A stretch of 64,000 nt of DNA, from positions 186,001-250,000 of the IMG/VR virus record IMGVR_UViG_3300049460_000312. One strand, 5' to 3'. Positions 28,281-45,982 of the stretch are shown here, piece after piece (the first letter of the stretch is position 1; each line of letters opens with the position of its first letter). The position numbers and the translations under genes were made by a program. The notes beneath the pieces are model-generated. The model was not told the origin of the DNA. It saw nothing but the letters and a program-made list of their open reading frames with translations, and ran no database searches.

Positions 28281-28880
28281 GCATTTTGCCCACCCTCTAA
28301 CCACTCGGTCTTACTCTAGCTGCTCCGCGGAGTGGCTAGTGTCAAGTGAGTGCGTTGGGGTGGGCGTATGCGCTTTTTGAGTGACGCGGATCTCTCAGCA
28401 AATCTCCTAGCGGCATCTCCATCGGTTCCAGCTTGATGGCGCGGACTAGGTCTCAGTGCGTATTAAGTCTCTGTCAAAGACACCACACAGGCGTCTATAT
28501 CTCGATTCTGGAAGCGTGTACTTACCAGGCGGAGGGCTCGTCAGTTCCCTCGGTATGACGTCAGGCGGCCGACGTACGCAAGTATGTCTGCAATCGGGAG
28601 CCTGGCGTGAGCGACGCATGTAAGAACCAGGTAAGTATAGGTCAGCTAATGCTCACTATGCCTGTCAGCCCTTTCTCTGGCGCATCGCTGCGTTTCAGAG
28701 ACCATCGGTCGCAGGTGCTCACGCTGCGAGGCACGATGGTGGTGGTGATGAGCGACAGACCACGCATCGTACCGTAGCACGATGCGGGTGAACAGAAGTG
28801 ACCTACAGAAATCCCAGCTCAGATGCCAGTACCGCAAAAGGCTAGCGTATCCGTAGATTGTTATTCTCCTTGTTCTTGCT
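28281..28880 (+). ncRNA. Candidate large structured RNA (about 600 nt)
   Basis: No credible ORF; many long helices with G-U pairs on the + strand (see findings). Confidence 0.55.
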
Positions 28881-28945
28881 TGTTGTTGGCGATTGGATTC
28901 GCTTGGTTCATAAAAGATAAGGGGCCGTAATTTCTTACAGCTATC

Positions 28946-29110
28946 CTACTTGATGCCGAAGAAGCGCTTGGCGAATTCGCTCGGCTCGTCAGAGTCGGGG
29001 ATATCAAACGACGCAACAGGCGGTTGAGCACGAAGGCTATCGAAGAGTTCTTCGAACTCCGCCTTCGCTTCTGGATTGATGCCAGACGGAGGGGCCTCAG
29101 GCTTAACCAT
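28946..29110 (-). CDS. Small hypothetical protein
   Basis: ATG overlaps the upstream stop. Confidence 0.5.
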   Translation of the reverse strand: MVKPEAPPSGINPEAKAEFEELFDSLRAQPPVASFDIPDSDEPSEFAKRFFGIK

Positions 29111-29357
29111 TATTTTCTTCCTTCGCTTGACTGAGAAAGACATCGCGCGCCCGTTCAACACGCTCGACACGCCACTGGTTCAGTAGCAGGTCGACATTCA
29201 AGGTGCTTGGCACCGGTGTGAGTGCCCTCGGGACTTCTTCAATCACTTCACACTTTGCCGGTTGCGGCTTGTTGCGCAACACATCCAAGAAGCGATGTGC
29301 CTGGAGTGCATCAGAGGTCGCTGAAATAGAAGACACTGGCAAGAGGCGAATGGTCAT
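29103..29357 (-). CDS. Hypothetical protein
   Basis: RBS GGAG upstream of the ATG. Confidence 0.5.
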   Translation of the reverse strand: MTIRLLPVSSISATSDALQAHRFLDVLRNKPQPAKCEVIEEVPRALTPVPSTLNVDLLLNQWRVERVERARDVFLSQAKEENNG

Positions 29358-29688
29358 GATTGGAAATCTCCAGGGTGTACTTCATGCGCGAATCGCTCTT
29401 CGAGCGAATCAGCTTAGCTGTCGGGTGCGTAGCCACGGTGGACTTGAACGCGTCCTTGAACGTTTGCACCGCTTCGATGAAGTGCACGAGCTTGGCTTCG
29501 TCGAGCATCGACATGTCGCTGTAGCGCAGCGCGCGTTGCAGGCGGCGCAGTTCGATTTCCACTGCTTCACGGTGTTCCGACGGGTTGGTGAAATGGTCTT
29601 CACCTTGCACTTCAAACGTTTCCACCGCAGCAGCAGCCACAACCGGAGCAACGTCATCACCAAACAGCGCGCGAGCGAATGCAAACAT
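29311..29688 (-). CDS. Hypothetical protein
   Basis: Strong RBS (TAAGGAG) and high-expression codon usage. Confidence 0.7.
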   Translation of the reverse strand: MFAFARALFGDDVAPVVAAAAVETFEVQGEDHFTNPSEHREAVEIELRRLQRALRYSDMSMLDEAKLVHFIEAVQTFKDAFKSTVATHPTAKLIRSKSDSRMKYTLEISNHDHSPLASVFYFSDL

Positions 29689-29778
29689 GGTAATTCTCCT
29701 TAATGAGTTAGTGTACTGACACTAACCCATCAAGGGTCAGTGCCAGCGTTTATTCTTTCAGCGGCTCGTGATGAGCCA

Positions 29779-30207
29779 TTATTTAATCCAGGTTGCTGAG
29801 CGGGTCGTGCCGTCGCTGAGGACGTACACCACCTTGACGCACTCACGGGTCTGGCCTGGGAAACACATCATGCCCGTGCAGATCGAGACGGCTGCCCAAG
29901 TATCGCGGCGCGCATTGTCTTCGATGTCATGCAGGAGTTGCTTGAGCACCTTCAGATGCATGTCTTCGTTGTACGGCAAAGCACGCTCAATCGGGGTGAT
30001 CAGCTCACGCACCTTGCCACTCATCGAGAAGTCGCCGATCTTGTTAAGGAGATCGGAGCGGCTGTACTCGACGAAGCCGAGCGGTGTATTGCCAGCCAAA
30101 GCGACAGGCTCAGGTTGCATACGTGTCGGGGCACAGTCGCTGAATGCATCCGCCAGGATATTGAGAGCAACAACGGTAGCGAGCTTCGAAGTACGGTTCA
30201 TCAACAT
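29779..30207 (-). CDS. Hypothetical protein
   Basis: RBS CAGGA before ATG at 30207. Confidence 0.6.
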   Translation of the reverse strand: MLMNRTSKLATVVALNILADAFSDCAPTRMQPEPVALAGNTPLGFVEYSRSDLLNKIGDFSMSGKVRELITPIERALPYNEDMHLKVLKQLLHDIEDNARRDTWAAVSICTGMMCFPGQTRECVKVVYVLSDGTTRSATWIK

Positions 30208-30259
30208 GGGGATTCCTGTCAGAAGTTTATTAAAAGAGGTAAGGGGAGTCAGGCCTGGC

Positions 30260-30580
30260 TCAGATGCCAAAGCCTTCGAAATGGAGCGCTTCGAGCTCGA
30301 TGAGACGCATCCGTGCCTCACTGCGTGCCTCAGCAGCAGCGCCAGCATCATACTGGATCTGTACCAGCCGCAGGTCGAGGGAGAATGCCGGCCGTTCGTG
30401 CGCAAGCCAGTAGGTGTGACCGCGCTCGGCGATGCGTACCACTTTCTGCCGGCGTTTTTCCCAGATCGACGCCATCTGCGCTTCGCGCCAGCGGCCGAAC
30501 CTGAAGAAACTGTGCTGGCTGATCAGCTTAACTGTACCGGTTACTGCTGCGGCAAGTGCACCACCAAAAGAGCGTGCCAT
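30260..30580 (-). CDS. Hypothetical protein
   Basis: Fills the gap in a run of small early genes. Confidence 0.5.
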   Translation of the reverse strand: MARSFGGALAAAVTGTVKLISQHSFFRFGRWREAQMASIWEKRRQKVVRIAERGHTYWLAHERPAFSLDLRLVQIQYDAGAAAEARSEARMRLIELEALHFEGFGI

Positions 30581-30601
30581 GGGAGAGTCCTGTAGAGGGG
30601 A

Positions 30602-30880
30602 TTAGAGAAGCATCATACCGGTGACTGCAAAGTTGGCGATGTACTTTTCCATCATCGCCATGCCGTCATGGCTCTTTGCTTTCACAAACTTGTCGACTTC
30701 CATCGCGAGGTGGCTGCCGAGGATCTGTTTGGTGTAACGACCTACGTTGGCGTGGGGCTTTTCCACTGCATCCTGAATGGCGGCGAGGGCCAGACGACGA
30801 CGATTTTCCCAATCCGTGGCCGGTGCTTTTTCCATGATCGACGGGAACAGGCCAGCAAACATTTGCGTAAAGATGGACAT
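30602..30880 (-). CDS. Hypothetical protein
   Basis: ORF in the early gene run. Confidence 0.6.
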   Translation of the reverse strand: MSIFTQMFAGLFPSIMEKAPATDWENRRRLALAAIQDAVEKPHANVGRYTKQILGSHLAMEVDKFVKAKSHDGMAMMEKYIANFAVTGMMLL

Positions 30881-30946
30881 GATTTTGACAAGATAAAGTA
30901 CAGGCGCATTGGAGAGAGCGTGTGCTCTCCCCGATGAGTCCGCTGA

Positions 30947-31180
30947 TTAAAGGCCTGTTTCCATAAACAGGTCAACTTCGTGCTCGGCCACTGACAACAG
31001 GCTCAAGCTTTCCAGCGCTTTGGCACTAGCGATCAGGCGCTGCAATTCATCAGCGCGGATGTTCTTGCGAAACACCGGAACGAACTCCGAGTGATCGAGC
31101 TTTTGTGCGGTAGCCAGTTTGCTCTGAGCGCGCTTGTAGACACGGTCAAACGTCGGCACAGCACCTTTCATGTTCAGCAT
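30947..31180 (-). CDS. Hypothetical protein
   Basis: RBS AAAGGA. Confidence 0.6.
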   Translation of the reverse strand: MLNMKGAVPTFDRVYKRAQSKLATAQKLDHSEFVPVFRKNIRADELQRLIASAKALESLSLLSVAEHEVDLFMETGL

Positions 31181-31258
31181 GATACTTACGTCCTTTCTCT
31201 GATTTAGATGTATGAGTTTACAGCGGCATAAAGGCCGGGCGAATGCCCGGCCTCCGTC

Positions 31259-31765
31259 CTACGCCAGCGCAGCCTGAATGTCCAGGTACTGCACGTGCAG
31301 CGCTTTCACCCGATCCAGGTTAGGCGTTGCATAGGTCGTATCGATCGCCTTCTGGAGGAAGGTGCCGATATCGTCCCACGGACCATGGCCCCGATCGGTG
31401 ACATCGGCACCGAAGATGAAGTCCACGTCCGAACCCGTCAACGTCTTACCGAAGCCATCGGTATCAAGCGCACGGGTAATGTACGACGAACAGCATACGC
31501 CGACGGCCACCGGGGCATCACCCGTCTTCACGTCGCGTTGAAACACCACCACGTTACCGAACGGTGTGCCAACGATAATCAGCTTACGGCCGTCCGGGGT
31601 TACCGAACCCACCATATTGCCGACCGACAGTTGCGGGCACGTTGCTGCATTCACCGCACCGAAGAAGTCACCGTCAATCACCCACTTCGGATCAAATCCG
31701 AGGGTGGTGACGAGCGCGTTGAACTTCGCATCAAACTTCTTCGAAGCATCCAGTTTCTTGAACAT
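31259..31765 (-). CDS. Hypothetical protein
   Basis: 168 aa; leader AACTCTAAATCAGGAG. Confidence 0.7.
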   Translation of the reverse strand: MFKKLDASKKFDAKFNALVTTLGFDPKWVIDGDFFGAVNAATCPQLSVGNMVGSVTPDGRKLIIVGTPFGNVVVFQRDVKTGDAPVAVGVCCSSYITRALDTDGFGKTLTGSDVDFIFGADVTDRGHGPWDDIGTFLQKAIDTTYATPNLDRVKALHVQYLDIQAALA

Positions 31766-31825
31766 TTAAGTTCTCCTGATTTAGAGTTATTAGAACTACG
31801 GGTTGGACGGCAGGACTTCAGCTAC

Positions 31826-31966
31826 TTACTTGACGTTGTTCTTGTTGAGCTTTTCAAGCGTGGCACGCAACTGCGCTTGAACCTTGGCGAGGTTGTTAGT
31901 GCGCAGGTTGTTTGCACGACGGGCGTTGCTCATTTGGGCAAACAGATCGACCATAGTTGCGGACAT
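31826..31966 (-). CDS. 46-aa basic helical micro-protein (below ORF-track cutoff)
   Basis: MSATMVDLFAQMSNARRANNLRTNNLAKVQAQLRATLEKLNKNNVK; RBS TAGGA within the conserved leader. Confidence 0.6.
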   Translation of the reverse strand: MSATMVDLFAQMSNARRANNLRTNNLAKVQAQLRATLEKLNKNNVK

Positions 31967-33138: not shown

Positions 33139-33154
33139 GATTATTTCCTTGATG

Positions 33155-33810: not shown

Positions 33811-34593
33811 TTACTGAACGTGCGCCTGGGCGACCTGCCGGGCGAAATAGACCGTGTGGGTCGACTCCGTCGGATTGCGATCCTTGATACTCGCGATCAC
33901 GCGTACCAGAACCTGTGGTGCTACCGCCATATTCTTGCCTGCGTCCGGAGTGGCATCCATCACAAACGACAGCGACACGCGAATCGACCCGCTGGTCTGG
34001 TTCTGCGCGCAATGCTCGGTGATATACTTCTCATTGTTTTTCAGGCAATGGTAGAGGTAGACACCCAGTTGCTCGACGCTATCGTTCATGCACATCCAGC
34101 CGTCCTGCGCCATGGCCGCAACCATCTCTTCTGTCAACACGGTCATAACAGAATAGTCCATCTCCAGTTGCTTAAGCTCATGCCAGCGGTTCTTCTCGTA
34201 GCCCGCCACATTGCTGTAGTTGGTCACGCGCTGTTCACCCTCCGCTGTGTAATGGGTGGTGGTCACCAGGTTCAGGCGCACCGGCCCCTTGCGGACGCCG
34301 GAGAGTTTGCGGATATGGCTCAGAATCGAAATGCAGGCACTACGCGGATCTTGCGGTTCGCTGATCGCCTGGACATACGAGGACAGATCGATGAAGGGAA
34401 TCGCTCGTGCGCTCGTCTGCTGCATCTCCTCAAGACTGTCAACCACTGATTCCTTGCGATCTTCCGGTACGGTTTCCTTCTTAGTGGCAGGCACTTCACG
34501 AGCACGATCGGGCAAGACATAGCCCGCGATAAACAGCAGCAGGTAGCCGAAGAACAGCCGGATACCGCGCACACACCTGGCGATGGTTTTCAT
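33811..34593 (-). CDS. Membrane-anchored hypothetical protein
   Basis: N-terminal TM (LFFGYLLLFIAGYVLP); ATGA-coupled to the upstream NTase. Confidence 0.65.
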   Translation of the reverse strand: MKTIARCVRGIRLFFGYLLLFIAGYVLPDRAREVPATKKETVPEDRKESVVDSLEEMQQTSARAIPFIDLSSYVQAISEPQDPRSACISILSHIRKLSGVRKGPVRLNLVTTTHYTAEGEQRVTNYSNVAGYEKNRWHELKQLEMDYSVMTVLTEEMVAAMAQDGWMCMNDSVEQLGVYLYHCLKNNEKYITEHCAQNQTSGSIRVSLSFVMDATPDAGKNMAVAPQVLVRVIASIKDRNPTESTHTVYFARQVAQAHVQ

Positions 34594-35537
34594 TTGCCTC
34601 CTTCGAGCAACATTTCAGCAAAGCGAGTGTTCAGCCTGTTGATCTGCTTGAGATAGTTTTCCATACTCCGGTCCGCCAGATGCGGCGGGACGATGATCAC
34701 CGGACGGCTCAGGACCAACGGGTGCAGCTTATCGATCACCCGAATACAGGTCGGGTGCCAATAGCTGTGACCGTTCTTGAACAAGCCATCGCGCAGATGC
34801 GGCAACATATTGCGTTGCAGGAACGAGACGTTGACATCCTGACCCACGTCCTGCAGATAGCCGTCGATGAGTTCGGCTAGGGTGAGGGTTTTGTTCAGCA
34901 CCAGCTCGCTCACAAAGCGCTGGCTCGTCACTGCCCAGCCAAGGAACAACCGGTAGATCGCATCCGAGATTTCCGAATGCTTGATCTCACCGCCTGACTT
35001 CATCAAGCCCCGGGCTTTGCTGGCGCGCCCGGCACAGGAATGCCGATAGCGCTCTGCGTCGAACGTAGAGGCTGCGAACGTATCGATCTGCTTGGTAAGG
35101 ACGTCATTGCCCATGAAGTCGATCACGAGGTTGTCGTGCCCGATGCGGAAGTCCAGATTACCCTTGCCGATTTCCCGCACAAAGAAGTCCAGGCTGACGA
35201 AGTTCAACTGCACCTCTTTTTCATCCACGGTGAAGTCTGCGTGCGTGCGTTGAAGCACTGACAGCGTGACTTGGGGCGGCACCGATTCTTCTTCAGCTAC
35301 CTGACGCGTATCGGCGGGGATCATCCGGGCATACTGGGAGATACCGCCCAGATACACCACGTACAGATCGATGTCCGATTCCGGACCCGCATAGCCTTTG
35401 GCCTGTGAGCCGAAAACTCCGGCATAAACCGGACGGATGTGAAAACGATCGCACTGCGCCTGGATCTCACGCATCAACATCCCGTAAAACGCTTCGCCGA
35501 ACTGACGTTCGAACGTCTTGTTATCGAAAAGCCCCAT
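34590..35537 (-). CDS. Pol-beta superfamily nucleotidyltransferase (RlaP/Nuc-transf-like), copy 2
   Basis: GVFGSQAKGYAGPESDIDLYVVY = GS-x2-xG-x4-SDxD signature; start corrected to 35537. Confidence 0.8.
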   Translation of the reverse strand: MGLFDNKTFERQFGEAFYGMLMREIQAQCDRFHIRPVYAGVFGSQAKGYAGPESDIDLYVVYLGGISQYARMIPADTRQVAEEESVPPQVTLSVLQRTHADFTVDEKEVQLNFVSLDFFVREIGKGNLDFRIGHDNLVIDFMGNDVLTKQIDTFAASTFDAERYRHSCAGRASKARGLMKSGGEIKHSEISDAIYRLFLGWAVTSQRFVSELVLNKTLTLAELIDGYLQDVGQDVNVSFLQRNMLPHLRDGLFKNGHSYWHPTCIRVIDKLHPLVLSRPVIIVPPHLADRSMENYLKQINRLNTRFAEMLLEGGK

Positions 35538-35590
35538 ACCACCCTCAATGTGTTCAGATGTTAAACGGGCCGCGCGAGGCGGCCCGGGTC

Positions 35591-36529
35591 TCATGCAGCC
35601 AACAACTCCGTCGGCGGCGTTTCGGCTTTGCTCTTGCCGTTACGCTCGTCTTCGTGATCGAGCAACTCCTGGTAGAGGTCGATCATTTCGCGAGTTTCTT
35701 CGGGCAGGTTCGGATACTGCTTCGGATGCTCGCGCAGGTAGTCCGTCGCCAGACGCAGTACGCGGCCGGTGAACTGCCTGAGCAGGCTGACGGCGTTCTC
35801 GTTGATGCCCTGCGGCATGTCGAACGGGCTACGTTCGGTACGCGCACGAATCACGCCCGTGACTTCCCGAAGAAAGCCTTCGGACATCGAGGTGGCCCAA
35901 TTGGCACGATTCATTTCGATCAGTTCCTGAATCGTACGGCAATGCTGCTTGTCGCCATCCAGGTAGGCGAGCATGCGGTGCGCCGACCAGAGCGTACCGA
36001 GGTAAGTGCGTTCCTGCTTGTACTCACGGCCATGATCGTCAATGGCTTGTAGCGTGCGCATACCGTTGGTGATATGTTCACCGCAGCGATGCACCAGGTT
36101 CGGCAACAGGAAATAATCCTGCGCGATGTCCTCGAACAGGAACCGTACCTGAGCGTTGTCCGCGGCGAAGCGTTCGTACGCCATCAGCGAGAAGGTGCTC
36201 GCATTCATGATGCCGCGCAAGAGACTACGCATATCCAGCAGCGATACCATGATCTGCCAGCCGAGCTCCCGCGACATCTGCGTGGAGAGCTTGGCGAGCT
36301 TGTCGCGCCGGTCATCCAGCGTGCCTTCGAAAATCGGCGCGTTGGACATGTTCAGGTAGTCCGAGACGGGTCGGTTCAGCAGGAAGCAGATGTCCGTGTC
36401 GGAGTTCGGGTCATTGAAGCCGCGCAGGATCGATCCGTGGATCGTCGCTGCCGTTACTTCCAGTCCCAGGTGACGAGAGACTAGGGCGGTGGCTTCAGCA
36501 AGTCGTTGCTTTTTGAGTTGTTCGTTCAT
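35591..36529 (-). CDS. Pol-beta superfamily nucleotidyltransferase (RlaP/Nuc-transf-like), copy 1
   Basis: IHGSILRGFNDPNSDTDICFLL signature and LDMR third-acid region; ends in ELLAA. Confidence 0.8.
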   Translation of the reverse strand: MNEQLKKQRLAEATALVSRHLGLEVTAATIHGSILRGFNDPNSDTDICFLLNRPVSDYLNMSNAPIFEGTLDDRRDKLAKLSTQMSRELGWQIMVSLLDMRSLLRGIMNASTFSLMAYERFAADNAQVRFLFEDIAQDYFLLPNLVHRCGEHITNGMRTLQAIDDHGREYKQERTYLGTLWSAHRMLAYLDGDKQHCRTIQELIEMNRANWATSMSEGFLREVTGVIRARTERSPFDMPQGINENAVSLLRQFTGRVLRLATDYLREHPKQYPNLPEETREMIDLYQELLDHEDERNGKSKAETPPTELLAA

Positions 36530-37513: not shown

Positions 37514-37686
37514 CGTTCTTCCTCATGTGGGTGCATGCGATAAAATAACCCTCCGAGTAAGAATTAGCAGCGCGCCCGCATTCTGTAGCCGCCACAACCC
37601 AATCCCGGTGGCTAGTTACATTCCATTTAACCTGGGTCGCTGTTCAGCTCGTTGGTTGAGGAAGTGCCGGTAACGCCCGCAGTACC

Positions 37687-37756
37687 TGCTCTGGTAGTAG
37701 ATTGGAATAACGCCGGTTACGACCCGGAAAAGTGGGTTCGATTCCCATCCAGGCAG
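37687..37756 (+). tRNA. tRNA-Arg(ACG)-like element, degenerate, no encoded CCA
   Basis: T-arm GTGGG-TTCGATT-CCCAT; anticodon arm CCGG-TTACGAC-CCGG; acceptor TGC(T)CTGG/CCAGGCA with a bulge; weak D-stem. Confidence 0.5.
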
Positions 37757-37765
37757 TGTCACAGC

Positions 37766-37810
37766 AAAAAAAAAAATAAAGCAGGGAGGCCGAAGCCTCC
37801 CTTTATGCCG
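37766..37810. terminator. Bidirectional terminator with TTATGCCG
   Basis: A-run, GGGAGGC/GCCTCCC stem, TTTATGCCG. Confidence 0.8.
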
Positions 37811-37814: not shown

Positions 37815-38165
37815 TTACCAGTAACGGGCATCCCCGGGCTTCTCGTACACCTGCACCTCGTGGTCTGCGTTACGCGTGTAGCGATGCAGTTCTTTCGAGA
37901 CCTGTTGACGATAAGTCCGTTCTGCCGTATTGCGATAGCTCCAGGGCACACTCGCGTGAAGGTATTCCTTGGTCAGGCAATCGCCGCGCTTCTTGCGAAG
38001 TTTGGCGTACTCGACTTTGGACAGCATTTCCTGCGCCGCCTTCCATCCGCCCGATGCGACTGGAATCCAGTGCAGATCCCACAGATAACCGCCGTCCACC
38101 GGACGGGAGTTATCGATGCAGTATTCGAGTGTACGGCTGGCGTTGCTGCGATAGGTGCGAGACAT
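37815..38165 (-). CDS. Basic hypothetical protein
   Basis: RBS GGAG before MSRTY. Confidence 0.55.
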   Translation of the reverse strand: MSRTYRSNASRTLEYCIDNSRPVDGGYLWDLHWIPVASGGWKAAQEMLSKVEYAKLRKKRGDCLTKEYLHASVPWSYRNTAERTYRQQVSKELHRYTRNADHEVQVYEKPGDARYW

Positions 38166-38256
38166 GGTTTTCTCCGAATGAAGGGCACATTCGGGTACTG
38201 GCATGCCAGCGTGTGGCGACGTGATACATGAGAGACTCCAAAGTTGGACTACAGTA

Positions 38257-38928
38257 TTACAGGTCGTGAAGCATCGCGATCAGTTCCTGATACTGGGCAC
38301 GCGTCCAGCTCGCCAGCATCTGGTGCTGGGTGTTGTCTGCCTGCAGCTCTTCACGGAATTCGATCGTGCTGGCGTCACCATTCAATAACTTGGCGACACC
38401 ATTCGAAAACGGTGTGGTGGTGCAGCCGAGCCATTGGCTGAAGTGGAAGAGCCAGTAGCATTCGCCAATCGTCAGCGGCAGCGGTTCCTTGCTGTTAAAG
38501 CGCTGATGAAACAGCGCGGTGTGACGTGTGGTCGGCGCTGTCTGGTAGTTGGTGAACACGTTCTTGCGAGCGTACTCGGCGAGCAGGAAGCGATCGAAGT
38601 CCGGATCGTTCGAAGCGATCAAACGCATGACTTCGTTGCTGCCCATATACAGATCGCGCGCCAGGTGACTCGGCACACAGACGAGGTAACGAGCGACTTT
38701 CACGTTGGCAGCGAGGGTATCGAACATCTCGTAGATACCGAGCTGCAGCGTGTGACGGGTCATCTCGACGTGTTCGAGATCGCGCTGTTCTTCAAGCGAC
38801 AGGGTGTTCCAGTTCGCAGGACGCGGGCGCGTGACCAGCGCGCCACGACTGGCCGCGCTGCGCTGAATCGCTTGTTCGAACTTTTCAGCCAGCGCCTTGG
38901 TCTTTTCTTGGGTGGTGATGATGCTCAT
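38257..38928 (-). CDS. Hypothetical protein
   Basis: RBS AAGGAG before ATG at 38928. Confidence 0.7.
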   Translation of the reverse strand: MSIITTQEKTKALAEKFEQAIQRSAASRGALVTRPRPANWNTLSLEEQRDLEHVEMTRHTLQLGIYEMFDTLAANVKVARYLVCVPSHLARDLYMGSNEVMRLIASNDPDFDRFLLAEYARKNVFTNYQTAPTTRHTALFHQRFNSKEPLPLTIGECYWLFHFSQWLGCTTTPFSNGVAKLLNGDASTIEFREELQADNTQHQMLASWTRAQYQELIAMLHDL

Positions 38929-39007
38929 GGTAAAACTCCTTTGTGGTGAGAGAACAGAGGGATTGAACGGCATAAAGGCCCAGAGCCAAAGCCCTGGGCA
39001 GACAGCA

Positions 39008-39746: not shown

Positions 39747-41093
39747 TCAGACACTGAGCGTGTCTGCTTTGCTACGAAACACTTCGTCAGCAGCAGGCGT
39801 CGATGACGTGACAGCCTGCACAAAACCTTCTGGGTCGTCCTCGTGCTCACTGAAGAAGGCGCTGATGTCGCAGGCCCGCAGCGAGCGCTCAATGGGCGTA
39901 TACGCCGGCCAGGAGCGTCCGTAGGACTTCTCGTAATACTCCATGATCGAGCGGGGTTCCATCCGACCCACTTCAATCAGACACGTCACGCGACCCGGGC
40001 GATACAGAGCAGGATCAATCTGCTCCAGATGGTTGGTGGTGAAAATCACCACGCAATCCGTGACCTCTGTGGGTGACTGCAGACTCGCCAGCATGCGACC
40101 CAAAACCGGATCATCGTCCATGATGAATTCACCAGGCTTTGGTTCAGTTTTCTGACGCTTACGCAGCCCCTGCATATAGGTGTCGAAATCATCCATCAAA
40201 AGGACAGGCACTTCCCCTTCAGTGATGTTCTCGCGCGCGGCGTAGACCATCTCGGAGAGCAGTACCGGATTGTGTCCGGAGCTGCTGATGGCGTTGACCA
40301 CAAAAAGCGAAGTCCGTAAACGCCAGGCGATATACTCCGCCAGTGCGGACTTACCGGTGCCGGGCTCACCATACAGCATGATCACGAGCTTGTGCGGGAA
40401 GTCCATCCTATTCTTCTTCTCGCGATGCCGAAGAAAAGTATCGATAGCTTCATCGATCTGCTGCTTGACCTTGTGGTCCAGTGCTAGAATGGGTAGCCCG
40501 GTAAAATTACGCTGACGCATGGCTTTAGGCTCAGCGCTCGACCACGGCGGCGTGATCAACTGATAGATACCAGGCACGGTATATTCACGCGCACTTTCAC
40601 CCAGCACCTCCAGAATCCGCTTGCGATGCATGCGCAGCGAGGTCAATGACAGGGTGATGATGCGGCGTTGCTTCTCGCCCTTTTGCTGCTGTTCCTGCCG
40701 CCGCGACACCCAGATCCAGGCGCCAGCATAATAGAAGAAGAAACCGCCATCGGCCAGCGTCTCAGCGAGCCGTTTCTTACGGGTGGTGAGGCGCGCGGTC
40801 GAACGTTGTCCGGAGATCCGTTTCTGGAGCGCATGCTCAAACTTCTCTGCCACCATCTGGATCATGGTGCGACCATCATCGTAGTCGTACTCGATGTAAT
40901 ACGTGAAGACCACGAAGCGACGGGCAGCGAACCAGAACTTCTTGGGTAAGCCCCGCGCGAAATACGCAATCGATGCAAAGATGGACGCTGTCGCTGCCCC
41001 GGCGATAAGCGGATTACCATTCAGCGCACTGGAGACCCAGCCCGTGAACATACCTACTAACTGCTGGACCTGCATAAGGGAGCTTGAAATCAT
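39747..41093 (-). CDS. BCS1-like membrane-anchored AAA+ ATPase
   Basis: N-terminal TM (NPLIAGAATASIFASIAYF), Walker A GEPGTGKS, Walker B LLMDDFD, SRH TTNHLEQIDPALYRPGR. Confidence 0.85.
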   Translation of the reverse strand: MISSSLMQVQQLVGMFTGWVSSALNGNPLIAGAATASIFASIAYFARGLPKKFWFAARRFVVFTYYIEYDYDDGRTMIQMVAEKFEHALQKRISGQRSTARLTTRKKRLAETLADGGFFFYYAGAWIWVSRRQEQQQKGEKQRRIITLSLTSLRMHRKRILEVLGESAREYTVPGIYQLITPPWSSAEPKAMRQRNFTGLPILALDHKVKQQIDEAIDTFLRHREKKNRMDFPHKLVIMLYGEPGTGKSALAEYIAWRLRTSLFVVNAISSSGHNPVLLSEMVYAARENITEGEVPVLLMDDFDTYMQGLRKRQKTEPKPGEFIMDDDPVLGRMLASLQSPTEVTDCVVIFTTNHLEQIDPALYRPGRVTCLIEVGRMEPRSIMEYYEKSYGRSWPAYTPIERSLRACDISAFFSEHEDDPEGFVQAVTSSTPAADEVFRSKADTLSV

Positions 41094-41789: not shown

Positions 41790-41819
41790 GGCGGTCTAGT
41801 CCTCAAAGACTACATCCAG

Positions 41820-42473: not shown

Positions 42474-42480
42474 ATTAGCC

Positions 42481-42891: not shown

Positions 42892-42904
42892 TCCTTGTTT
42901 TCCT

Positions 42905-43516
42905 TTAAGCCGCCTTTTCTACCGCGTCCAGTAGACGGGTATTCCAGGGCGGCACAAAACCTTCACAGGCCGCCTTACGGGAGGTACGGCTAATGGCCCC
43001 ACAGAGGATCTGGGTGCGCTGGTCCTGCGGGTATTTGAAGTGGGTCGGATGGCGTTCGTCATCCAGCGTCTCCGAGAAACCCCGGAAGCTGGCGTTGTAT
43101 TCGAAACCAATCGACTCGATGAACTTCATGCTCCAGTGACAGAGGACGATTTCCCGCACACTTGTAGTGTAGAGTTTACGGGCGAGGATGTCTCCGTCTT
43201 TCACAATCAGCCACGGCTGAATCGAGCGCAGCAACATCGCGAAGAGGTCGAGACTGCCAAAGTGGCAGGCTGCCCGACTTTCATAGACCCAGTGATTGCC
43301 CTTGTTCTCTTTCACCCGCCAGCCCCAGGTCTCGAACGACTCAGCGCCCGAGGTCAGCATCGTGCGCAGTGTCGAGCTGTTGTGCAGACCCAGTAACGAG
43401 TCTTTGAACTCCGGCGGATTCGTGATGCCATACAACTGATCCAGCATGGCGATGGTCCGCGCCGGAGCTGACTTGCGGATTTTCAAGCGGGTAGCGACAC
43501 CTTCATAAGCACTCAT
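42905..43516 (-). CDS. Hypothetical protein, paralogue of 41820-42473
   Basis: See the paralogue; ends in VEKAA. Confidence 0.7.
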   Translation of the reverse strand: MSAYEGVATRLKIRKSAPARTIAMLDQLYGITNPPEFKDSLLGLHNSSTLRTMLTSGAESFETWGWRVKENKGNHWVYESRAACHFGSLDLFAMLLRSIQPWLIVKDGDILARKLYTTSVREIVLCHWSMKFIESIGFEYNASFRGFSETLDDERHPTHFKYPQDQRTQILCGAISRTSRKAACEGFVPPWNTRLLDAVEKAA

Positions 43517-43546
43517 TGGTAAGACCTTTCAGATATATTCCACGTA

Positions 43547-43554
43547 GTAATATA
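43547..43554 (-). promoter_or_regulatory. Early promoter core (TATATTAC)
   Basis: Exact match to the phiKZ early consensus, 31 nt upstream of the ATG. Confidence 0.65.
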
Positions 43555-43689
43555 CGCCCAACGGAAAGTTAGAATCAATTCCACACTATAAATTGGACAA
43601 TGCCTATAAAATTTGACGGCATAAAAAAGGGAGAGGGCCAATGCCCTCTCCCGGAGTGCATTGCCTCGCGGGAACGTTCCACCAAACGT

Positions 43690-44412
43690 CCCGAGATTCA
43701 ACCCGCAAACAAACCACAGCTGAACGACGCCACCAGTCTTAGTGAGCGCGGGGAGGGGATACGGGCCCATCTACCTATCTTACCCCTCCCCACCGCCTCG
43801 TCCCAGGTCACCATCAAACCTGAGCGGAGTGTGGCTAAGCCCACTCACTACCCTCATTGTTCTCCGCACCCGTAAGTGCATTGGGTCAGCTCCCAACTCA
43901 ATGAAGGAACTACGCTCGTTCTAACGTAGCTTTGCTTTTTACCGCATACCAAGATAGCGGTGTTGACCTCTCCTCGTTTGCTTGGGTCTTCGAGGTTTCG
44001 CAATACCCATATCCTTCTCAGATAGGCTGGTGCTGCTGAGGTAGAGACATGCTGACGCCACTGGCGGACCTGCACTTTTCCCTACGCTGCTGCTACCCAG
44101 GCTAGCCTTCTAAACTGATCCATGACCTTTGCATGGCTGCGTCGGCTCGTCTGCATTTGACTTTAATTGTCGATCCCAACCGCTACACTACCTTAGTTCG
44201 TTCGAGGTGTTGTCGGTCTTACTTATCCTACTACTGGTCCGATGACTCGGGTGGAGGAACCAGTGGCAGGCTGCCGCTGTAGGAGGAGCTGGTGATCGCC
44301 TGTCACTCACGCCAGACGAAAAATGTTACCGTTCAGAAAGATAGTCCACGAGCTGCCGAACATAAAAGTTCCATGCTGGCTTAGGGGGACATAATAATTA
44401 GGGAACTTTTTT
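43690..44412 (+). ncRNA. Candidate large structured RNA (about 700 nt)
   Basis: No credible ORF; many hairpins, a possible pseudoknot, and a terminal hairpin plus T6 on the + strand. Confidence 0.55.
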
Positions 44413-44470
44413 ACAGTTATCATACATAACAGCAAAAAAAAAGAACTCAGGTGGCCGAAGCCACCCAAGC

Positions 44471-44599
44471 TTACTTGAGCCAGTGCACCAAGAGAGCAAT
44501 CGCACCCAGAGCTACAACCAGCTTCAGCTTGTTCTTCTGCACTTGCACGTAGAACTCGGGTTCTTCTACGAGGCGAACGAAGACGGTACGCTTTTTCAT
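44471..44599 (-). CDS. 42-aa membrane micro-protein
   Basis: MKKRTVFVRLVEEPEFYVQVQKNKLKLVVALGAIALLVHWLK; ATGA overlap. Confidence 0.55.
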   Translation of the reverse strand: MKKRTVFVRLVEEPEFYVQVQKNKLKLVVALGAIALLVHWLK

Positions 44600-44763
44600 G
44601 TCAGGGCTTGCACTGCGGCGTGCAGTTCTTTGTTTTCCTTGAGCACGGCGTCCAGGCGAGAACCTGCGTCACGACACTCGGTACAGTTGCTGTGGATCAG
44701 ATGCTCGACAAGTTGTTCATCGGTGAACTCTTCGTCCAGGTCCTTCTGGTGACAAATCGTCAT
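44596..44763 (-). CDS. 55-aa protein with CxxC
   Basis: MTICHQKDLDEEF..HSNCTECRDAG..; RBS GGGAG. Confidence 0.55.
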   Translation of the reverse strand: MTICHQKDLDEEFTDEQLVEHLIHSNCTECRDAGSRLDAVLKENKELHAAVQALT

Positions 44764-44766
44764 GGC

Positions 44767-44880
44767 TTATCTCCCGTAAAGCGCGATCGCGCCGACCACT
44801 AGAAGAATAAGTGACGCGGTTGAAAGTAGCCGAGGCCAGAAGAACTCGGCCAGACTGACTTCGTGTTCTCCGACCCGCAT
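44767..44880 (-). CDS. 37-aa membrane micro-protein
   Basis: MRVGEHEVSLAEFFWPRLLSTASLILLVVGAIALYGR; TAATG overlap. Confidence 0.5.
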   Translation of the reverse strand: MRVGEHEVSLAEFFWPRLLSTASLILLVVGAIALYGR

Positions 44881-45107
44881 TACTGCCCCTCCGGCCACAT
44901 CAATGCATCAGCCTTGCCGGTGAACACCCGCCAGGCGGCCCGAAAGCGCGATACGATGCCAATGGCACATTGCGGTCGCATCGGCACCCACTTGCCATTG
45001 ATTTCGGTGGAGACTTCACGGGTACACTTGACCAGGCCTGCCAGGGTCCAGATCGTGGGTTCTTGTTTGAATTCCGGCCATAGTTTCAGTTTGCGCAACA
45101 ACTTCAT
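44880..45107 (-). CDS. Small hypothetical protein
   Basis: RBS AAGGA before MKLLRKL. Confidence 0.65.
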   Translation of the reverse strand: MKLLRKLKLWPEFKQEPTIWTLAGLVKCTREVSTEINGKWVPMRPQCAIGIVSRFRAAWRVFTGKADALMWPEGQ

Positions 45108-45413
45108 TTTTCTTTCCTTTGGTGTTGGTGACAAAAAATAACAGCATAAAGGAGCGCAGGGGGCGGCGATGACCCGAGGCTAACCCGTCCCCGTCCACCG
45201 CCGCCCTTCTCCTACACCGCCCTCCCCGGATTTGCCGGACGGAGGACTATTTTCGATCGCATGCACGAAAGGTCGCACTTCCGGATACTCCCGCGTAGGA
45301 AGCAATCCGACATGGCGTACCGCACGCGACCGACGTCGCGGGAACTCCCGCGAGGGTCAGCGCCGTCGGGTCTCTCTTCCCGGGGGCGCCAGACTCTTTA
45401 CTACAACAATACT

Positions 45414-45489
45414 TGGCTCCCCGGGTTGGACTTGAACCAACGACCAACGGATTAACAGTCCGCTACTCTACCGACTGAGCTACCAGGGA
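45414..45489 (-). tRNA. tRNA-Asn(GTT) with encoded CCA
   Basis: TCCCTGG/CCGGGGA acceptor, D-arm GCTC-AGTCGGTA-GAGT, anticodon loop CT-GTT-AA, T-loop TTCAAGT. Confidence 0.95.
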
Positions 45490-45505
45490 TCTACTACAGA
45501 AACAA

Positions 45506-45582
45506 TGGCGCGGCGTAGGGGACTTGAACCCCTGACCCCTGGCGTGACAGGCCAGTACTCTAACCAACTGAGCTAACACCGC
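45506..45582 (-). tRNA. tRNA-Asp(GTC) with encoded CCA
   Basis: GCGGTGT/ACGCCGC acceptor, anticodon loop CT-GTC-AC, T-loop TTCAAGT. Confidence 0.95.
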
Positions 45583-45596
45583 AAACTACAAAACAA

Positions 45597-45982
45597 GAGG
45601 CTATACTCCCAGGGGCGACAGTTCGTTCTCTCAACCGCCGCTAACGCCGCAGTCAACTCTCGATCCTGCCCTAGGGGCTATAGTCTCGCTGCTAACGAGT
45701 TAATAACTTGAAGTTCCGATTGATGGTCTTCCCTTCCTACACTTTGACGCAAGGGTATCAGCCTTCGTCTCATTGAGTCCCCGATGGGCGCGCCTCCTTT
45801 CGGTTAGCGCGCATGAGGCGATCGCGGCCTTTCGCCGCGCTCTACGTAGTTTCCGGCACCGTCCCCTTCGGGCGGCCGTGTCTTTGCCAGAACGCCAAAG
45901 TAGCTGCTTCAGGATTCTGGTAGAGCCGGATGCGAATGCTAGTGTGAGTCTTCGCATGTAATTGACCGAACGTGTATTTTTT
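45597..45982. ncRNA. Candidate structured RNA (about 380 nt) beside the tRNAs
   Basis: Dense hairpins with tetraloop-type loops and no credible ORF; strand ambiguous, + favoured. Confidence 0.5.

What the first reader, a model, noticed from the sequence alone, without database searches (positions are those of the whole stretch)
28281..45982. A set of counter-oriented structured RNAs embedded in the early region
Seen: four separate non-coding elements (28.3-28.9, 37.56-37.76, 43.7-44.4 and 45.6-46.0 kb) appear to be + strand, while every protein gene from 21.9 to 55.9 kb is minus strand. Three have a + oriented terminator or T-run. They show no obvious primary-sequence similarity to each other. 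Inference: a dedicated phage RNA repertoire under a different promoter class, e.g. late-made or virion-packaged RNAs, decoys for RNA-sensing defences, or scaffolds for the phage nucleus. The co-occurring NTases could act on them.
Basis: inference. Interest (0 to 1): 0.62.

Follow-up and report, generated by a model that had tools for sequence, protein, structure and literature searches.

The report
Conserved jumbo-phage RNA island, co-oriented
The four "counter-oriented RNAs" are real conserved elements of a Ralstonia-type jumbo phage, but three run in the same direction as the neighbouring genes: a new ~765-nt structured RNA, a structured RNA that frames the tRNA genes, and a hidden small-protein gene with a structured tail; only a tRNA-Arg-like gene is truly reversed.

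Summary
The window belongs to a 283-kb phiKZ-like phage from a rhizosphere metagenome. Its nearest relatives are Ralstonia phages FLC4-3B, FLC1-1B and RP12.

All four elements exist and are conserved, but the "+ strand" reading fails for three of them.

- **Element 3 (43625-44390, minus)** is a ~765-nt non-coding RNA unit. It sits between a TATG start motif and the phage's standard hairpin plus TTTATGCCG. In nine phage lineages its core keeps 94% of cells paired, against 38-46% in slid controls. 34 of 71 pairs show compensatory changes, and invariant G·U pairs fix the strand. A root metatranscriptome holds a relative as a discrete 621-nt contig with no flanking genes.
- **Element 4 (45583-45957)** and an unlisted element R5 (45140-45413) are the 5' and 3' domains around the minus-strand tRNA-Asp and tRNA-Asn. 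One lineage keeps them fused with no tRNA between.
- **Element 1** is an unannotated 70-codon gene with an AUC/AUU start. Its frame is open in six lineages (dN/dS 0.24-0.71). A ~380-nt covarying 3' domain follows it.
- **Element 2** is a marginal tRNA-Arg(ACG)-like gene that really is on the + strand. It is inverted relative to the FLC phages.

No Rfam family matches. The closest analogues are the GOLLD and ROOL RNAs. Function is unknown.

The parts
28924..28941 (-). AT-rich hairpin upstream of element 1. Its core GTAAGAAATTAC is invariant in six lineages. It may be the terminator of the upstream gene, the 5' hairpin of the unit, or both.
28909..28912 (-). TATG motif, a candidate phage late-type start with G at 28909. 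Present in the window, L014 and L031; absent in FLC4-3B, RP12 and L032.
   Evidence: motif definition from PMC7598289
28646..28858 (-). Unannotated small ORF of 70 codons plus stop. A conserved AAGGAG lies 6-8 nt before a conserved AUC (AUU in two lineages). The N-terminus is aromatic and hydrophobic; the C-terminus is basic with an R-H-S-E motif.
   Evidence: The frame is open for 67-85 codons in six lineages. Indels are in frame. dN/dS is 0.24-0.71. R-H-S-E is kept through synonymous codon changes. No Pfam, PHROG or word-search homologue was found.
28270..28645 (-). Structured 3' domain of element 1. It holds the longest invariant blocks and the best-covarying helices.
   Evidence: One 9-bp helix has 6 compensatory pairs. 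G·U:A·C is 15:6 read on the minus strand over the whole of element 1 (10:3 in its helices with compensatory changes). RNAalifold gives -140.7 (minus) against -125.9 (plus).
28279..28291 (-). Weak hairpin followed by a T-run that closes the element 1 unit. RP12 and L031 carry the standard TTATGC tail here.
37560..37685 (+). Structured 5' leader of the tRNA-Arg-like gene. It is homologous to the leader in the FLC phages and shows a compensatory hairpin change.
37686..37757 (+). tRNA-Arg(ACG)-like gene, the only truly counter-oriented element. It has a canonical T-loop and anticodon loop, an irregular 8-9-bp acceptor stem with a bulge, and a weak D-stem.
   Evidence: ARAGORN calls it. The Rfam tRNA model scores 31.4 bits against a cut-off of 29. 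The FLC copies lie on the gene strand and fail the Rfam cut-off.
37783..37802 (.). Two-sided terminator hairpin. The + side carries the standard TTATGCCG, after the tRNA-Arg-like gene. The minus side carries a run of 11 T, after gene 37815-38204.
44444..44471 (-). Terminator of the upstream small gene. It marks the 5' boundary of the element 3 unit.
43625..44390 (-). Element 3 (R3): an independent structured non-coding RNA of about 765 nt. It runs from the G of TATG (44393-44390) to the T-run after the hairpin at 43652-43629.
   Evidence: (alignment and covariation); (strand); start motif and terminator conserved in 8 of 9 lineages; RNA-library contigs at 43732-44347 and 44261-44387
43739..43970 (-). 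Conserved core of R3: 231 model positions, 71 base pairs, 10-11 helices.
   Evidence: The model was built. It hits nine lineages at 76-275 bits. 94.3% of cells are paired against 38-46% when slid. 34 of 71 pairs are compensatory, reached by 0 of 500 shuffles.
43629..43652 (-). R3 terminator hairpin, followed by TTTTTTATGCCG.
45583..45957 (-). Element 4 (R4): the structured 5' domain upstream of tRNA-Asp. It starts at the conserved ATGCNGAGACTCACACTG.
   Evidence: G·U:A·C is 8:3 on the minus strand, with 16 compensatory pairs. The start block is conserved in seven lineages. The ATG frame is open only in the window.
45972..45982 (-). A-rich promoter-like motif AAAAAATACAC, 14-15 nt before the R4 start block. 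Conserved in seven lineages.
   Evidence: phiKZ middle promoters have an A/T-rich element near -24, and a 201phi2-1 tRNA is made from a middle promoter.
45506..45582 (-). tRNA-Asp (GTC)
45414..45489 (-). tRNA-Asn (GTT)
45140..45413 (-). R5, not in the finding: the structured 3' domain downstream of tRNA-Asn. It ends in a long conserved hairpin plus TTTATGCTG.
   Evidence: z = -5.0 on the minus strand. RNAalifold gives -48.6 (minus) against -29.5 (plus), with 9 compensatory pairs. Its motifs are found in L024, L025, L028 and L029.

Best explanation
The region holds a conserved RNA module of a clade of Ralstonia-type, phiKZ-like jumbo phages. It is transcribed in the same direction as the surrounding genes.

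**Shown**
1. R3 (43625-44390, minus) is a free-standing, highly structured non-coding RNA of about 765 nt. It has its own T(A/G)TG start motif and its own standard terminator.
2. R4 (45583-45957) and R5 (45140-45413) are the 5' and 3' structured domains of one minus-strand unit. The variable tRNA array sits in its linker: Asp and Asn here, up to four called tRNAs in the FLC phages, and none in lineage L024.
3. Element 1 is a small unannotated gene with an AUC/AUU start (28858-28646, minus). A ~380-nt covarying 3' RNA domain follows it.
4. Element 2 is a marginal tRNA-Arg(ACG)-like gene with a structured leader. It has been inverted in this lineage, so it converges on a two-sided terminator.

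**Inferred**
- R3 and R4/R5 are made by the phage's own non-virion RNA polymerase.
- They accumulate as stable, compactly folded RNAs and act in trans.
- They work as RNA or RNA-protein scaffolds tied to the phage tRNA supply or to translation, in the manner proposed for the phage-borne GOLLD and ROOL RNAs.
- This functional step is a guess, based on their position, size and conservation pattern.
For: **Identity of the phage:**

**Conservation beyond the neighbouring genes**
- R3 is 71% identical to RP12; the adjacent gene is 49%.
- Against FLC4-3B the figures are 78.5% and 66%.

**R3 structure**
- In five lineages 97.2% of cells are paired, with 10 compensatory pairs.
- In nine lineages 94.3% are paired against 38-46% when slid. 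34 of 71 pairs are compensatory, reached by 0 of 500 shuffles.

**Strand**
- Several G·U pairs are invariant in the nine-lineage alignment; on the other strand they would be C·A.
- The core is 97.2% paired as minus RNA and 83.0% as plus RNA.
- Strand-neutral G·U:A·C counts are R3 11:3, R1 15:6, R4 8:3 and R5 2:1.
- All RNAalifold energies favour the minus strand.
- The model hits every relative on the gene strand.

**Unit boundaries**
- Hairpin plus TTTATGC[CT]G occurs 55 times in the genome, against about 4 expected.
- TATG with the start at G is the phiKZ late-promoter motif (PMC7598289).
- The start motif and the terminator flank R3 in 8 of 9 lineages.

**Expression**
- A root metatranscriptome holds a 621-nt contig at depth 20 that covers only 43732-44347.
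- Depth is zero on the neighbouring genes at 42.5-43.7 kb and over 44376-44643.
- Two short low-depth contigs lie over the small genes at 44.7-44.9 kb.
- A second RNA contig ends at 44387, 3 nt from the predicted start.

**R4/R5**
- Their motifs are conserved in L024, L025, L028 and L029.
- They are fused with no tRNA in L024.
- R5 abuts R3 directly in L025, L028 and L029.

**Small ORF:**

**tRNA-Arg-like gene and its inversion:**

**Phage-specific:** 20-mers from R1 and R3 are absent from about 185,000 cellular genomes.
Against: - There is no strand-specific RNA evidence. The RNA runs were available only as contigs, which cannot show strand, ends or abundance. They also come from relatives, not from this phage.
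- The nine-lineage alignment was fitted to the model, which inflates pair counts.
- The start motif reads TGTG rather than TATG in FLC4-3B, L024 and L029. All four letters are required by phiKZ polymerase in vitro. The conserved TGTCC may therefore be RNA sequence rather than a promoter.
- For R1 the G·U:A·C excess is modest (15:6). Its 3' domain could simply be a 3'UTR.
- R4/R5 could be no more than a processed leader and trailer.
- Nothing found here bears directly on function. No Rfam family, GOLLD and ROOL included, matches at E up to 5.
- The small ORF has no homologue, uses a rare start codon and overlaps a covarying hairpin.
Confidence: 0.75

Rival explanations
1. One reading: the four elements are + strand RNAs, transcribed against the flow of the minus-strand genes from a separate promoter class.
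For: - Element 2 really is on the + strand, and a standard TTATGCCG follows its hairpin on the + side.
- GC skew over element 1 is slightly positive on the + strand.
- The single-sequence fold energy of element 1 is lower on + (-246 against -233), though its z-score is not.
- One C(UUCG)G-type hairpin in R4 reads best on the + strand.
Against: - G·U:A·C counts, RNAalifold energies and z-scores all favour the minus strand for elements 1, 3, 4 and R5.
- The terminators that bound elements 1 and 3 carry their T-runs on the minus strand.
- R4 and R5 are contiguous with minus-strand tRNAs.
- The strand-specific model hits all nine lineages on the gene strand.
Confidence: 0.04
2. The structured stretches are ordinary untranslated parts of neighbouring transcripts, not RNAs with a role of their own. 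On this view R4 and R5 are a tRNA-operon leader and trailer removed by RNase P, Z or E. The element 1 3' domain is a stabilising 3'UTR of the small ORF, or a regulatory 5'UTR of the next gene.
For: - R4 and R5 directly flank the tRNAs with no terminator between them.
- Leader-derived small RNAs next to tRNAs are known in 201phi2-1 and PAK_P3.
- The element 1 domain follows an ORF within one promoter-to-terminator unit.
Against: - Lineage L024 keeps R4 fused to R5 although it has no tRNA there.
- R4 plus R5 add up to about 650 nt of covarying structure, far more than processing signals need.
- R3 has its own boundaries and no adjoining ORF or tRNA in most lineages.
- The strongest sequence invariance lies in loops and junctions.
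Confidence: 0.2
3. The elements act as DNA, for example as a replication origin, packaging site or protein-binding array, and not as RNA.
For: They are large conserved gene-free stretches with inverted repeats in a phage whose origin of replication is not mapped. Nothing more specific supports this.
Against: - Compensatory changes keep long-range helices up to several hundred nt apart.
- The strand asymmetry of G·U against A·C cells has no meaning for duplex DNA.
- There are no repeat arrays.
- An RNA-library contig is confined to R3.
Confidence: 0.03
4. The small open frame in element 1 is a by-product of RNA sequence conservation, and element 1 is entirely non-coding.
For: - Stop-free stretches of 40-100 codons are common in these regions on both strands.
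- The frame has no AUG, GUG or UUG start at the right place.
- No protein in a 5.8-billion-sequence word search, Pfam or PHROGs resembles it.
- A hairpin with several compensatory changes lies inside it.
- Gene callers did not call it in any contig.
Against: - The frame is open in six lineages despite 40-50% nucleotide divergence.
- All indels are multiples of three.
- Differences pile up at third codon positions (19 against 10 and 8), unlike the flat control downstream.
- dN/dS is below 1 in every unsaturated pair (0.24-0.71).
- R-H-S-E is kept through AGG/CGG/CGC/CGA, CAT/CAC, AGT/AGC and GAG/GAA.
- The Shine-Dalgarno sequence and the AUY codon are conserved at fixed spacing.
Confidence: 0.25

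Closest known systems
[quoted passage not shown]
   Same: - It is encoded by phages and prophages and is usually next to tRNA islands.
- It is about 800 nt long.
- It has a conserved 3' region and a more variable 5' region.
- tRNAs sometimes sit in its linker.
- Its function is unknown (bioRxiv 10.1101/2024.12.08.627333).
- R3 has the same size and a conserved 3' core.
- R4-tRNAs-R5 has the same "tRNAs in the linker" layout.
   Different: - The Rfam library, which includes this family, gives no match even at E up to 5.
- The hosts and phages differ: here Betaproteobacteria and phiKZ-like jumbo phages.
- Assembly into multimers or cages has not been tested for R3.
ROOL RNA (Rumen-Originating, Ornate, Large)
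   Same: It is a phage or prophage RNA of about 580 nt found near tRNA islands. It is abundant, of unknown function, and may work as RNA alone. It is comparable in size to R4+R5 and to the element 1 unit.
   Different: No Rfam match. The sequence and secondary structure are unrelated. Element 1 also contains a protein-coding part.
Small non-coding RNAs of phiKZ and 201phi2-1 found by ONT-cappable-seq, dRNA-seq and Grad-seq
   Same: They come from the same broad phage group and the same phage-polymerase transcription system. That system has terminator motifs and early, middle and late promoters. Some of these small RNAs lie next to tRNAs.
   Different: - Those RNAs are under 250 nt and mostly come from 5'UTRs by premature termination.
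- R3 is about three times longer and stands alone.
- The R3 model finds nothing in phiKZ, Burkholderia phage FLC9, RSL2 or RSF1.
Phage tRNA genes and tRNA arrays of jumbo phages
   Same: tRNA-Asp and tRNA-Asn resemble the phiKZ pair at 75% identity. The content of the array varies between close relatives. The FLC genome paper reports five tRNAs in that region.
   Different: - The tRNA-Arg(ACG)-like gene is atypical.
  - It barely passes the Rfam cut-off here and fails it in the FLC phages.
  - It has a bulged 8-9-bp acceptor stem.
  - It carries a ~125-nt structured leader.
  - In this phage it is inverted without the A-rich motif and the terminator that flank it in FLC.
Genes with near-cognate AUU or AUC start codons, such as bacterial infC (from my own knowledge)
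   Same: A Shine-Dalgarno sequence lies at normal spacing before an AUY codon that is conserved across lineages.
   Different: No autoregulatory logic is known here. The product is a new 67-85-residue peptide with no detectable relatives.

Membership tests
GOLLD / ROOL / any Rfam family (4227 models) | A match to the family's covariance model | tested here: not met
   At gathering thresholds the window gives only three tRNA hits. Permissive scans (E up to 5) of 28100-29000 and 43500-46050 give only chance-level hits to unrelated families.
GOLLD-like large phage RNAs (functional kind, not family) | Phage-encoded, more than 500 nt, extensive covarying structure, next to tRNA genes | tested here: met
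   R3 is about 765 nt with 34 of 71 core pairs compensatory. It lies 0-1 kb from the tRNA unit in all lineages that have tRNAs there. It is absent from cellular genomes.
GOLLD-like large phage RNAs (functional kind, not family) | Assembly into homo-oligomers or nanocages | not testable with these tools
   This needs in-vitro transcription followed by size-exclusion chromatography or cryo-EM.
tRNA (element 2) | A cloverleaf recognised by tRNA finders, with T-loop and 7-nt anticodon loop | tested here: met
   ARAGORN calls tRNA-Arg(ACG). Rfam tRNA scores 31.4 bits against a cut-off of 29. The T-loop and the anticodon loop with U33 and A37 can be read directly from the sequence.
tRNA (element 2) | A regular 7-bp acceptor stem and D-arm, and a robust score in relatives | tested here: not met
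   The model alignment shows non-standard pairs in the acceptor and D stems. The FLC1-1B and FLC4-3B copies do not reach the Rfam cut-off. Aminoacylation was not tested.
Intrinsic terminator of this phage (hairpin + TTTATGC[CT]G) | A G+C-rich hairpin followed by the motif on the transcribed strand | tested here: met
   The motif occurs 55 times in the genome against about 4 expected. It lies at the minus-strand ends of R3 (43624) and R5 (45149), and on the + side of the hairpin after element 2 (37803).
phiKZ-type late promoter (T-3 A T G+1) | All four letters TATG at the transcript start | tested here: inconclusive
   R3 has TATG in the window, RP12, MTEW, L025 and L028. It has TGTG in FLC4-3B, L024 and L029, and none was found in L030. 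The motif definition comes from PMC7598289. No start site has been mapped.
Protein-coding gene (small ORF in element 1) | A conserved open frame, in-frame indels, purifying selection and a ribosome-binding site | tested here: met
   Six lineages keep 67-85 open codons. dN/dS is 0.24-0.71. R-H-S-E shows synonymous codon variation. AAGGAG lies 6-8 nt before AUY. Translation itself was not tested.

The most novel reading that the evidence does not exclude
R3, and the R4-linker-R5 RNA that carries the tRNA array, are two new classes of large "ornate" phage RNAs. They are specific to a clade of phiKZ-like jumbo phages of soil Betaproteobacteria. Like GOLLD and ROOL they would act as self-assembling RNA or RNA-protein machines linked to tRNA handling or translation. 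These phages transcribe with their own polymerases and, by analogy with phiKZ, may do so inside a phage nucleus; that was not tested here. The adjacent AUC-initiated micro-protein with its structured RNA tail would be a dual-function RNA belonging to the same programme.
Probability: 0.3. Interest if true: 0.8.

Novelty: new variant of a known kind. Interest (0 to 1): 0.58.

Why it matters
- **Rarity.** Very few large structured RNAs of unknown function are known in bacteria and phages (OLE, GOLLD, ROOL, raiA). Each has proved structurally remarkable.
- **Tractable system.** R3 is a well-supported new example in cultivable jumbo phages of a crop pathogen's genus (RP12, FLC1-1B, FLC4-3B). That makes it directly testable by deletion, northern blot and cryo-EM.
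- **Link to tRNAs.** In the R4-tRNA-R5 layout the structured domains persist even where the tRNAs are gone. This offers a second, independent case of the unexplained link between large phage RNAs and tRNA arrays.
- **Annotation.**
  - A conserved gene with an AUC/AUU start is missed by all gene callers.
  - A tRNA-like gene is missing from the public feature tables.
  - About 2.5 kb of "empty" DNA per genome is in fact functional.
- **Method.** The work also shows that a reader judging strand by eye from A-runs and T-runs can get the orientation wrong.

Tried and rejected
- **Rfam.** Searches at gathering and permissive thresholds found nothing beyond the tRNAs.
- **Exact-pattern scans.**
  - R1 and R3 blocks in IMG/VR found only RP12.
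  - In JGI metagenomes the first pattern found nothing and the second found one contig, MTEW01001443.
  - In about 185,000 cellular genomes they found nothing.
- **The search for related loci** with the 305-aa neighbour found no relative.
- **The R3-core model** found nothing in phiKZ, Burkholderia phage FLC9, RSL2 or RSF1. This included a filter-free scan of the FLC9 and phiKZ tRNA regions. It also found nothing in lineages L026 and L027.
- **A first z-score script** timed out.
- **The genome search** could not reach the Logan or JGI records behind my loci.
- **PDB sequence searches** of the two NTases were uninformative.
- **One PHROG call** failed on an out-of-frame coordinate.
- **Small ORF.** A word search, PHROGs and Pfam found no relatives.
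- **Hidden ORFs considered and rejected.**
  - R4: the 85-codon ATG frame at 45700-45957 is open only in the window and stops after 10-17 codons in six other lineages.
  - R3: its indels break the frame, and its open frames coincide with invariant sequence.
- **The gap at 51935-52596** was rejected as a further RNA. It holds a missed gene starting at 52514.
- **Sigma-70-type promoters** are not enriched: 6 found against 9.4 expected.
- **Literature.** No paper found describes these regions.

Full report
**Where the window comes from**

The window is bases 186001-250000 of a 283,373-bp virus record with direct terminal repeats. It was assembled from a rhizosphere metagenome.
- Its nearest cultured relatives are the Ralstonia jumbo phages FLC4-3B and FLC1-1B (about 81% nucleotide identity in the regions studied) and RP12/RP31 (about 73%).
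- RP12/RP31 are described as phiKZ-related (PMC5468394).
- G+C is 56%.
- A crude codon-usage gene finder of 54 genes between 20 and 58 kb on the minus strand. Inside 21.9-55.9 kb the only + call is one ambiguous overlap at 38434-38949.

**Do the four elements exist?**

Yes.
- The relatives carry unannotated gaps at the same positions.
- The stretches align well with those gaps and contain long invariant blocks.
- They are among the largest gene-free gaps in the genome.
- R3 is more conserved than the genes beside it.
  - Against RP12 it is 71% identical; the adjacent gene is 49%.
  - Against FLC4-3B the figures are 78.5% and 66%.
- All regions fold more stably than dinucleotide shuffles. On the minus strand z is -3.9 for R1, -3.2 for R3, -2.1 for R4 and -5.0 for a fifth element, R5.
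- R5 lies at 45140-45413, just downstream of tRNA-Asn.

**Strand**

The strongest terminator-like sites in 27.5-46.5 kb are on the minus strand: 43652-43629, 44471-44444 and 37802-37783.

To judge strand without bias I folded the alignments with G·U pairs forbidden. I then counted cells that are G·U or A·C as read on the minus strand.

| Element | G·U:A·C | Lineages |
|---|---|---|
| R1 | 15:6 (10:3 in helices with compensatory change) | four |
| R3 | 11:3 | four |
| R4 | 8:3 | three |
| R5 | 2:1 | four |

- RNAalifold energies all favour the minus strand.
  - R1: -140.7 against -125.9.
  - R3: -235.9 against -183.6.
  - R4: -60.5 against -57.0.
  - R5: -48.6 against -29.5.
- The R3 core structure is 97.2% paired if the RNA is minus and 83.0% if it is plus. 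It contains several G·U pairs that never vary across nine lineages.
- R4 and R5 are contiguous with the minus-strand tRNA-Asp and tRNA-Asn.

**Element 3 (R3)**

*Boundaries.*
- Hairpin plus TTTATGC[CT]G occurs 55 times in the genome, against about 4 expected. It follows most genes.
- In phiKZ the late promoter is T(-3)ATG(+1), with the start at G (PMC7598289). The motif therefore looks like a terminator with a restart signal.
- R3 lies between the terminator of the upstream small gene (44471-44444) and its own terminator (43652-43629, then TTTTTTATGCCG).
- The conserved sequence begins at TATG|TCCC, with G at 44390. The unit is about 765 nt.

*More lineages.*
- One metagenome contig (MTEW01001443, locus L012) added a divergent copy.
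- I then used the AAA+ ATPase gene at 39747-41093 to find relatives at 41-66% protein identity and fetched their contigs.
- A covariance model of the 231-nt R3 core hit L024, L025, L029, L028 and L030 at 216, 188, 192, 100 and 76 bits. Every hit is on the gene strand.

*Structure in nine lineages.*
- 94.3% of cells are paired, against 38-46% in slid controls.
- 34 of 71 pairs carry compensatory double changes.
- No shuffle out of 500 reaches any measure.
- The alignment is fitted to the model, which favours it. The five-lineage MAFFT alignment gave the same picture.

*Architecture.* The start motif T(A/G)TGTCC lies 384-460 nt before the core, and hairpin plus TTTTATGCCG lies 110-125 nt after it, in 8 of 9 lineages.

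*Invariant parts.* These include single-stranded junctions and loops, for example GGUAAAAAGCA and a hairpin loop AGCUGA.

*Limits of the family.*
- The model finds no second copy in this genome.
- It finds nothing in phiKZ, FLC9, RSL2 or RSF1.
- It finds nothing in lineages L026 and L027.
- A 20-mer from R3 is absent from about 185,000 cellular genomes.

**Expression evidence**
- In a root metatranscriptome (X11) a 621-nt contig at depth 20 covers only 43732-44174 plus 44261-44347. Its variable insert is replaced.
- Depth in that run is zero on the neighbouring genes at 42.5-43.7 kb and over 44376-44643. Two short low-depth contigs lie over the small genes at 44.7-44.9 kb.
- A second run (X13) has low-depth contigs over R3, R5 (45167-45410), R4 (45662-45957) and some genes. 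One of them ends at 44387, 3 nt from the predicted start.
- A wastewater library holds more distant copies of the R3 core.
- These are contigs of relatives. They show presence in RNA libraries, not strand, ends or level.

**Element 4, R5 and the tRNAs**

*R4 (45583-45957).*
- It begins with a block, ATGCNGAGACTCACACTG, that is conserved in seven lineages.
- An equally conserved A-rich motif (AAAAAATACA) lies 14-15 nt before that block.
- This resembles the A/T-rich element near -24 of phiKZ middle promoters. It also fits the report that a 201phi2-1 tRNA is made from a middle promoter.
- The ATG frame is open for 85 codons only in the window. It stops after 10-17 codons in six other lineages, so R4 is non-coding.

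*R5.* It ends in a long conserved hairpin plus TTTATGCTG.

*The tRNA array between them varies.*
- Asp and Asn here.
- Gln, Asp, Asn and Tyr in the FLC phages.
- Asn in RP12.
- Ser and Tyr in L025.
- Thr and Ser in L028.
- None in L024.

*Two layout facts.*
- In L024, R4 runs straight into R5. The two domains are therefore kept even without tRNAs.
- In L025, L028 and L029, R5 is followed at once by the R3 start. In the window two or three small genes lie between them.
- The conserved order is therefore R4, tRNAs, R5, 0-3 small genes, R3, all on the gene strand.

**Element 1**

*Extra lineages.* These came from Logan and JGI contigs: L014, L031 and L032.

*5' third: a hidden gene.* It lies at 28858-28646 on the minus strand.
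- A conserved AAGGAG lies 6-8 nt before a conserved AUC (window, FLC, RP12, L014) or AUU (L031, L032).
- From there a frame stays open for 67-85 codons in all six lineages.
- Indels are multiples of three.
- Differences between the window and L014 fall 10, 8 and 19 on codon positions 1, 2 and 3. The downstream control is flat.
- dN/dS is 0.24-0.71 in every unsaturated pair.
- The motif R-H-S-E is kept through AGG/CGG/CGC/CGA, CAT/CAC, AGT/AGC and GAG/GAA.
- I take this as an unannotated small-protein gene with a near-cognate start, at about 75% confidence.
- It has no relatives in Pfam, PHROGs or the word-indexed protein collection.

*3' part: structured RNA.* The remaining ~380 nt (28645-28270) holds the longest invariant blocks and the best covariation. 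One 9-bp helix has six compensatory pairs. The unit ends in a weak hairpin plus T-run.

**Element 2**
- ARAGORN calls tRNA-Arg(ACG) on the + strand at 37686-37757. Rfam gives 31.4 bits against a cut-off of 29.
- The T-loop fixes the + orientation.
- The same unit, a leader of about 125 nt plus the tRNA, exists in FLC1-1B and FLC4-3B on the gene strand. It is missing from their feature tables, and those copies fail the Rfam cut-off.
- RP12 and L024 lack it.
- Compensatory differences between the window and FLC keep a bulged 8-9-bp acceptor stem, the anticodon stem and a leader hairpin. I read these.
- In the window the segment is inverted. It has lost the A-rich motif and the terminator that flank it in FLC.
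- It now faces gene 37815-38204 across a hairpin that carries the standard TTATGCCG on the + side and a run of 11 T on the minus side.
- Whether it is still expressed is open.

**What it most likely is**

Shown:
- R3, R4, R5 and the 3' domain of element 1 are structured RNAs on the gene strand.
- They are conserved across a clade of jumbo phages and are phage-specific.

Inferred:
- They are transcribed by the phage polymerase from the motifs named above.
- They accumulate as stable RNAs.

Guessed:
- They act in trans as RNA or RNA-protein scaffolds connected with the phage tRNA supply or translation.

**Closest known systems**

The closest known systems are GOLLD and ROOL (bioRxiv 10.1101/2024.12.08.627333).
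- Both are phage-borne and lie next to tRNA islands.
- Both are 580-800 nt long and of unknown function.
- GOLLD has a conserved 3' region and a variable 5' region, and tRNAs sometimes sit in its linker.
- Both form RNA cages.

The elements here are not members of either family: no Rfam model matches.

The small RNAs described in phiKZ and 201phi2-1 are under 250 nt and mostly derive from 5'UTRs. No paper found mentions these regions.

**The NTases**

The genes at 34590-35594 and 35591-36529 match NTP_transf_2 above its cut-off.
- Four of the five fetched lineages that carry R3 show an NTP_transf_2 gene: L024, L025, L029 and L030. L028 shows none.
- L026 and L027 lack R3. They carry a CCA-adding-enzyme gene and show no such NTase gene in the fetched range.
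- This is a synteny hint only. PDB sequence searches told nothing.

**Verdict**
The elements are real; the orientation is wrong for three of four; one element is partly coding; one element was missed.
A dedicated RNA set exists, but it is neither counter-oriented nor shown to use a separate promoter class.
- R3 in particular is a well-supported new large structured RNA. It deserves experimental follow-up in the cultured relatives.

Noticed in passing
window 28646-28858 (minus): An unannotated gene of 70 codons starts at AUC (AUU in two lineages), 6-8 nt after a conserved AAGGAG. Its frame is open in six lineages, dN/dS is 0.24-0.71, and no protein relatives are known. Gene callers missed it in every contig.
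   Followed up: yes
window 45140-45413 (minus): A fifth conserved structured element, R5, lies directly downstream of tRNA-Asn. In lineage L024 it is fused to R4 with no tRNA between them.
   Followed up: yes
whole genome G000; in the window e.g. 43624, 45149, 41163 (minus) and 37803, 26948 (plus): Hairpin plus TTTATGC[CT]G occurs 55 times, against about 4 expected. This is the phage's standard terminator signature, and it embeds the TATG of phiKZ-type late promoters. Several hairpins carry the motif on both sides.
   Followed up: partly
window 37560-37760 versus L004 1258-1440 and L005 1297-1480: The tRNA-Arg-like unit is inverted in the window relative to FLC1-1B and FLC4-3B. It has lost the A-rich upstream motif and the terminator seen there. 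Short GCTGTCA-like words sit at the breakpoints. RP12 and L024 lack the unit.
   Followed up: partly
L001 about 3545-3660; L006 about 3700-3815: FLC4-3B and RP12 carry a further tRNA-like sequence with an insertion of about 45 nt next to the array. ARAGORN does not call it. The RP12 copy has a matching acceptor stem; the FLC4-3B copy does not. It may be an intron-bearing or decaying tRNA. It is absent from the window.
   Followed up: no
G000:C1:74937-75828 and G000:C1:121148-121846 (outside the window): My crude gene finder leaves two more large gene-free gaps, of 892 and 699 nt. They could be further RNA genes or missed small genes.
   Followed up: no
L026 2045-3286; L027 4097-5338: Related phage lineages without R3 carry a CCA-adding-enzyme gene (PolyA_pol plus HD) a few genes from the AAA+ gene, and show no NTP_transf_2 gene there. 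Four of the five R3-bearing lineages show an NTP_transf_2 gene (L028 shows none). This possible co-variation is worth testing.
   Followed up: no
window about 27886-28195 (minus): A small gene with a signal-peptide or lipoprotein-like N-terminus (MKKLLAALALGLVLS...) lies between element 1 and the 305-aa gene. L014, L015 and L016 have a called gene at the same position. FLC4-3B and RP12 have no counterpart.
   Followed up: no
window 45700-45957 (minus): An 85-codon, very basic ATG frame lies inside R4. It is open only in this phage and stops after 10-17 codons in six other lineages, so it is probably not a gene.
   Followed up: yes
window 51935-52596: This looked like another large gap. It holds a missed gene of about 100 codons starting at ATG 52514, plus an A/T-rich intergenic stretch. 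It is annotated as protein-coding in the FLC phages.
   Followed up: yes
L019 1540-2291 and 2466-3738 (Burkholderia phage FLC9): FLC9 also has gene-free gaps of 750 and 1270 nt around unannotated tRNAs. The R3 model does not match them. They may hold analogous but unrelated RNAs.
   Followed up: partly
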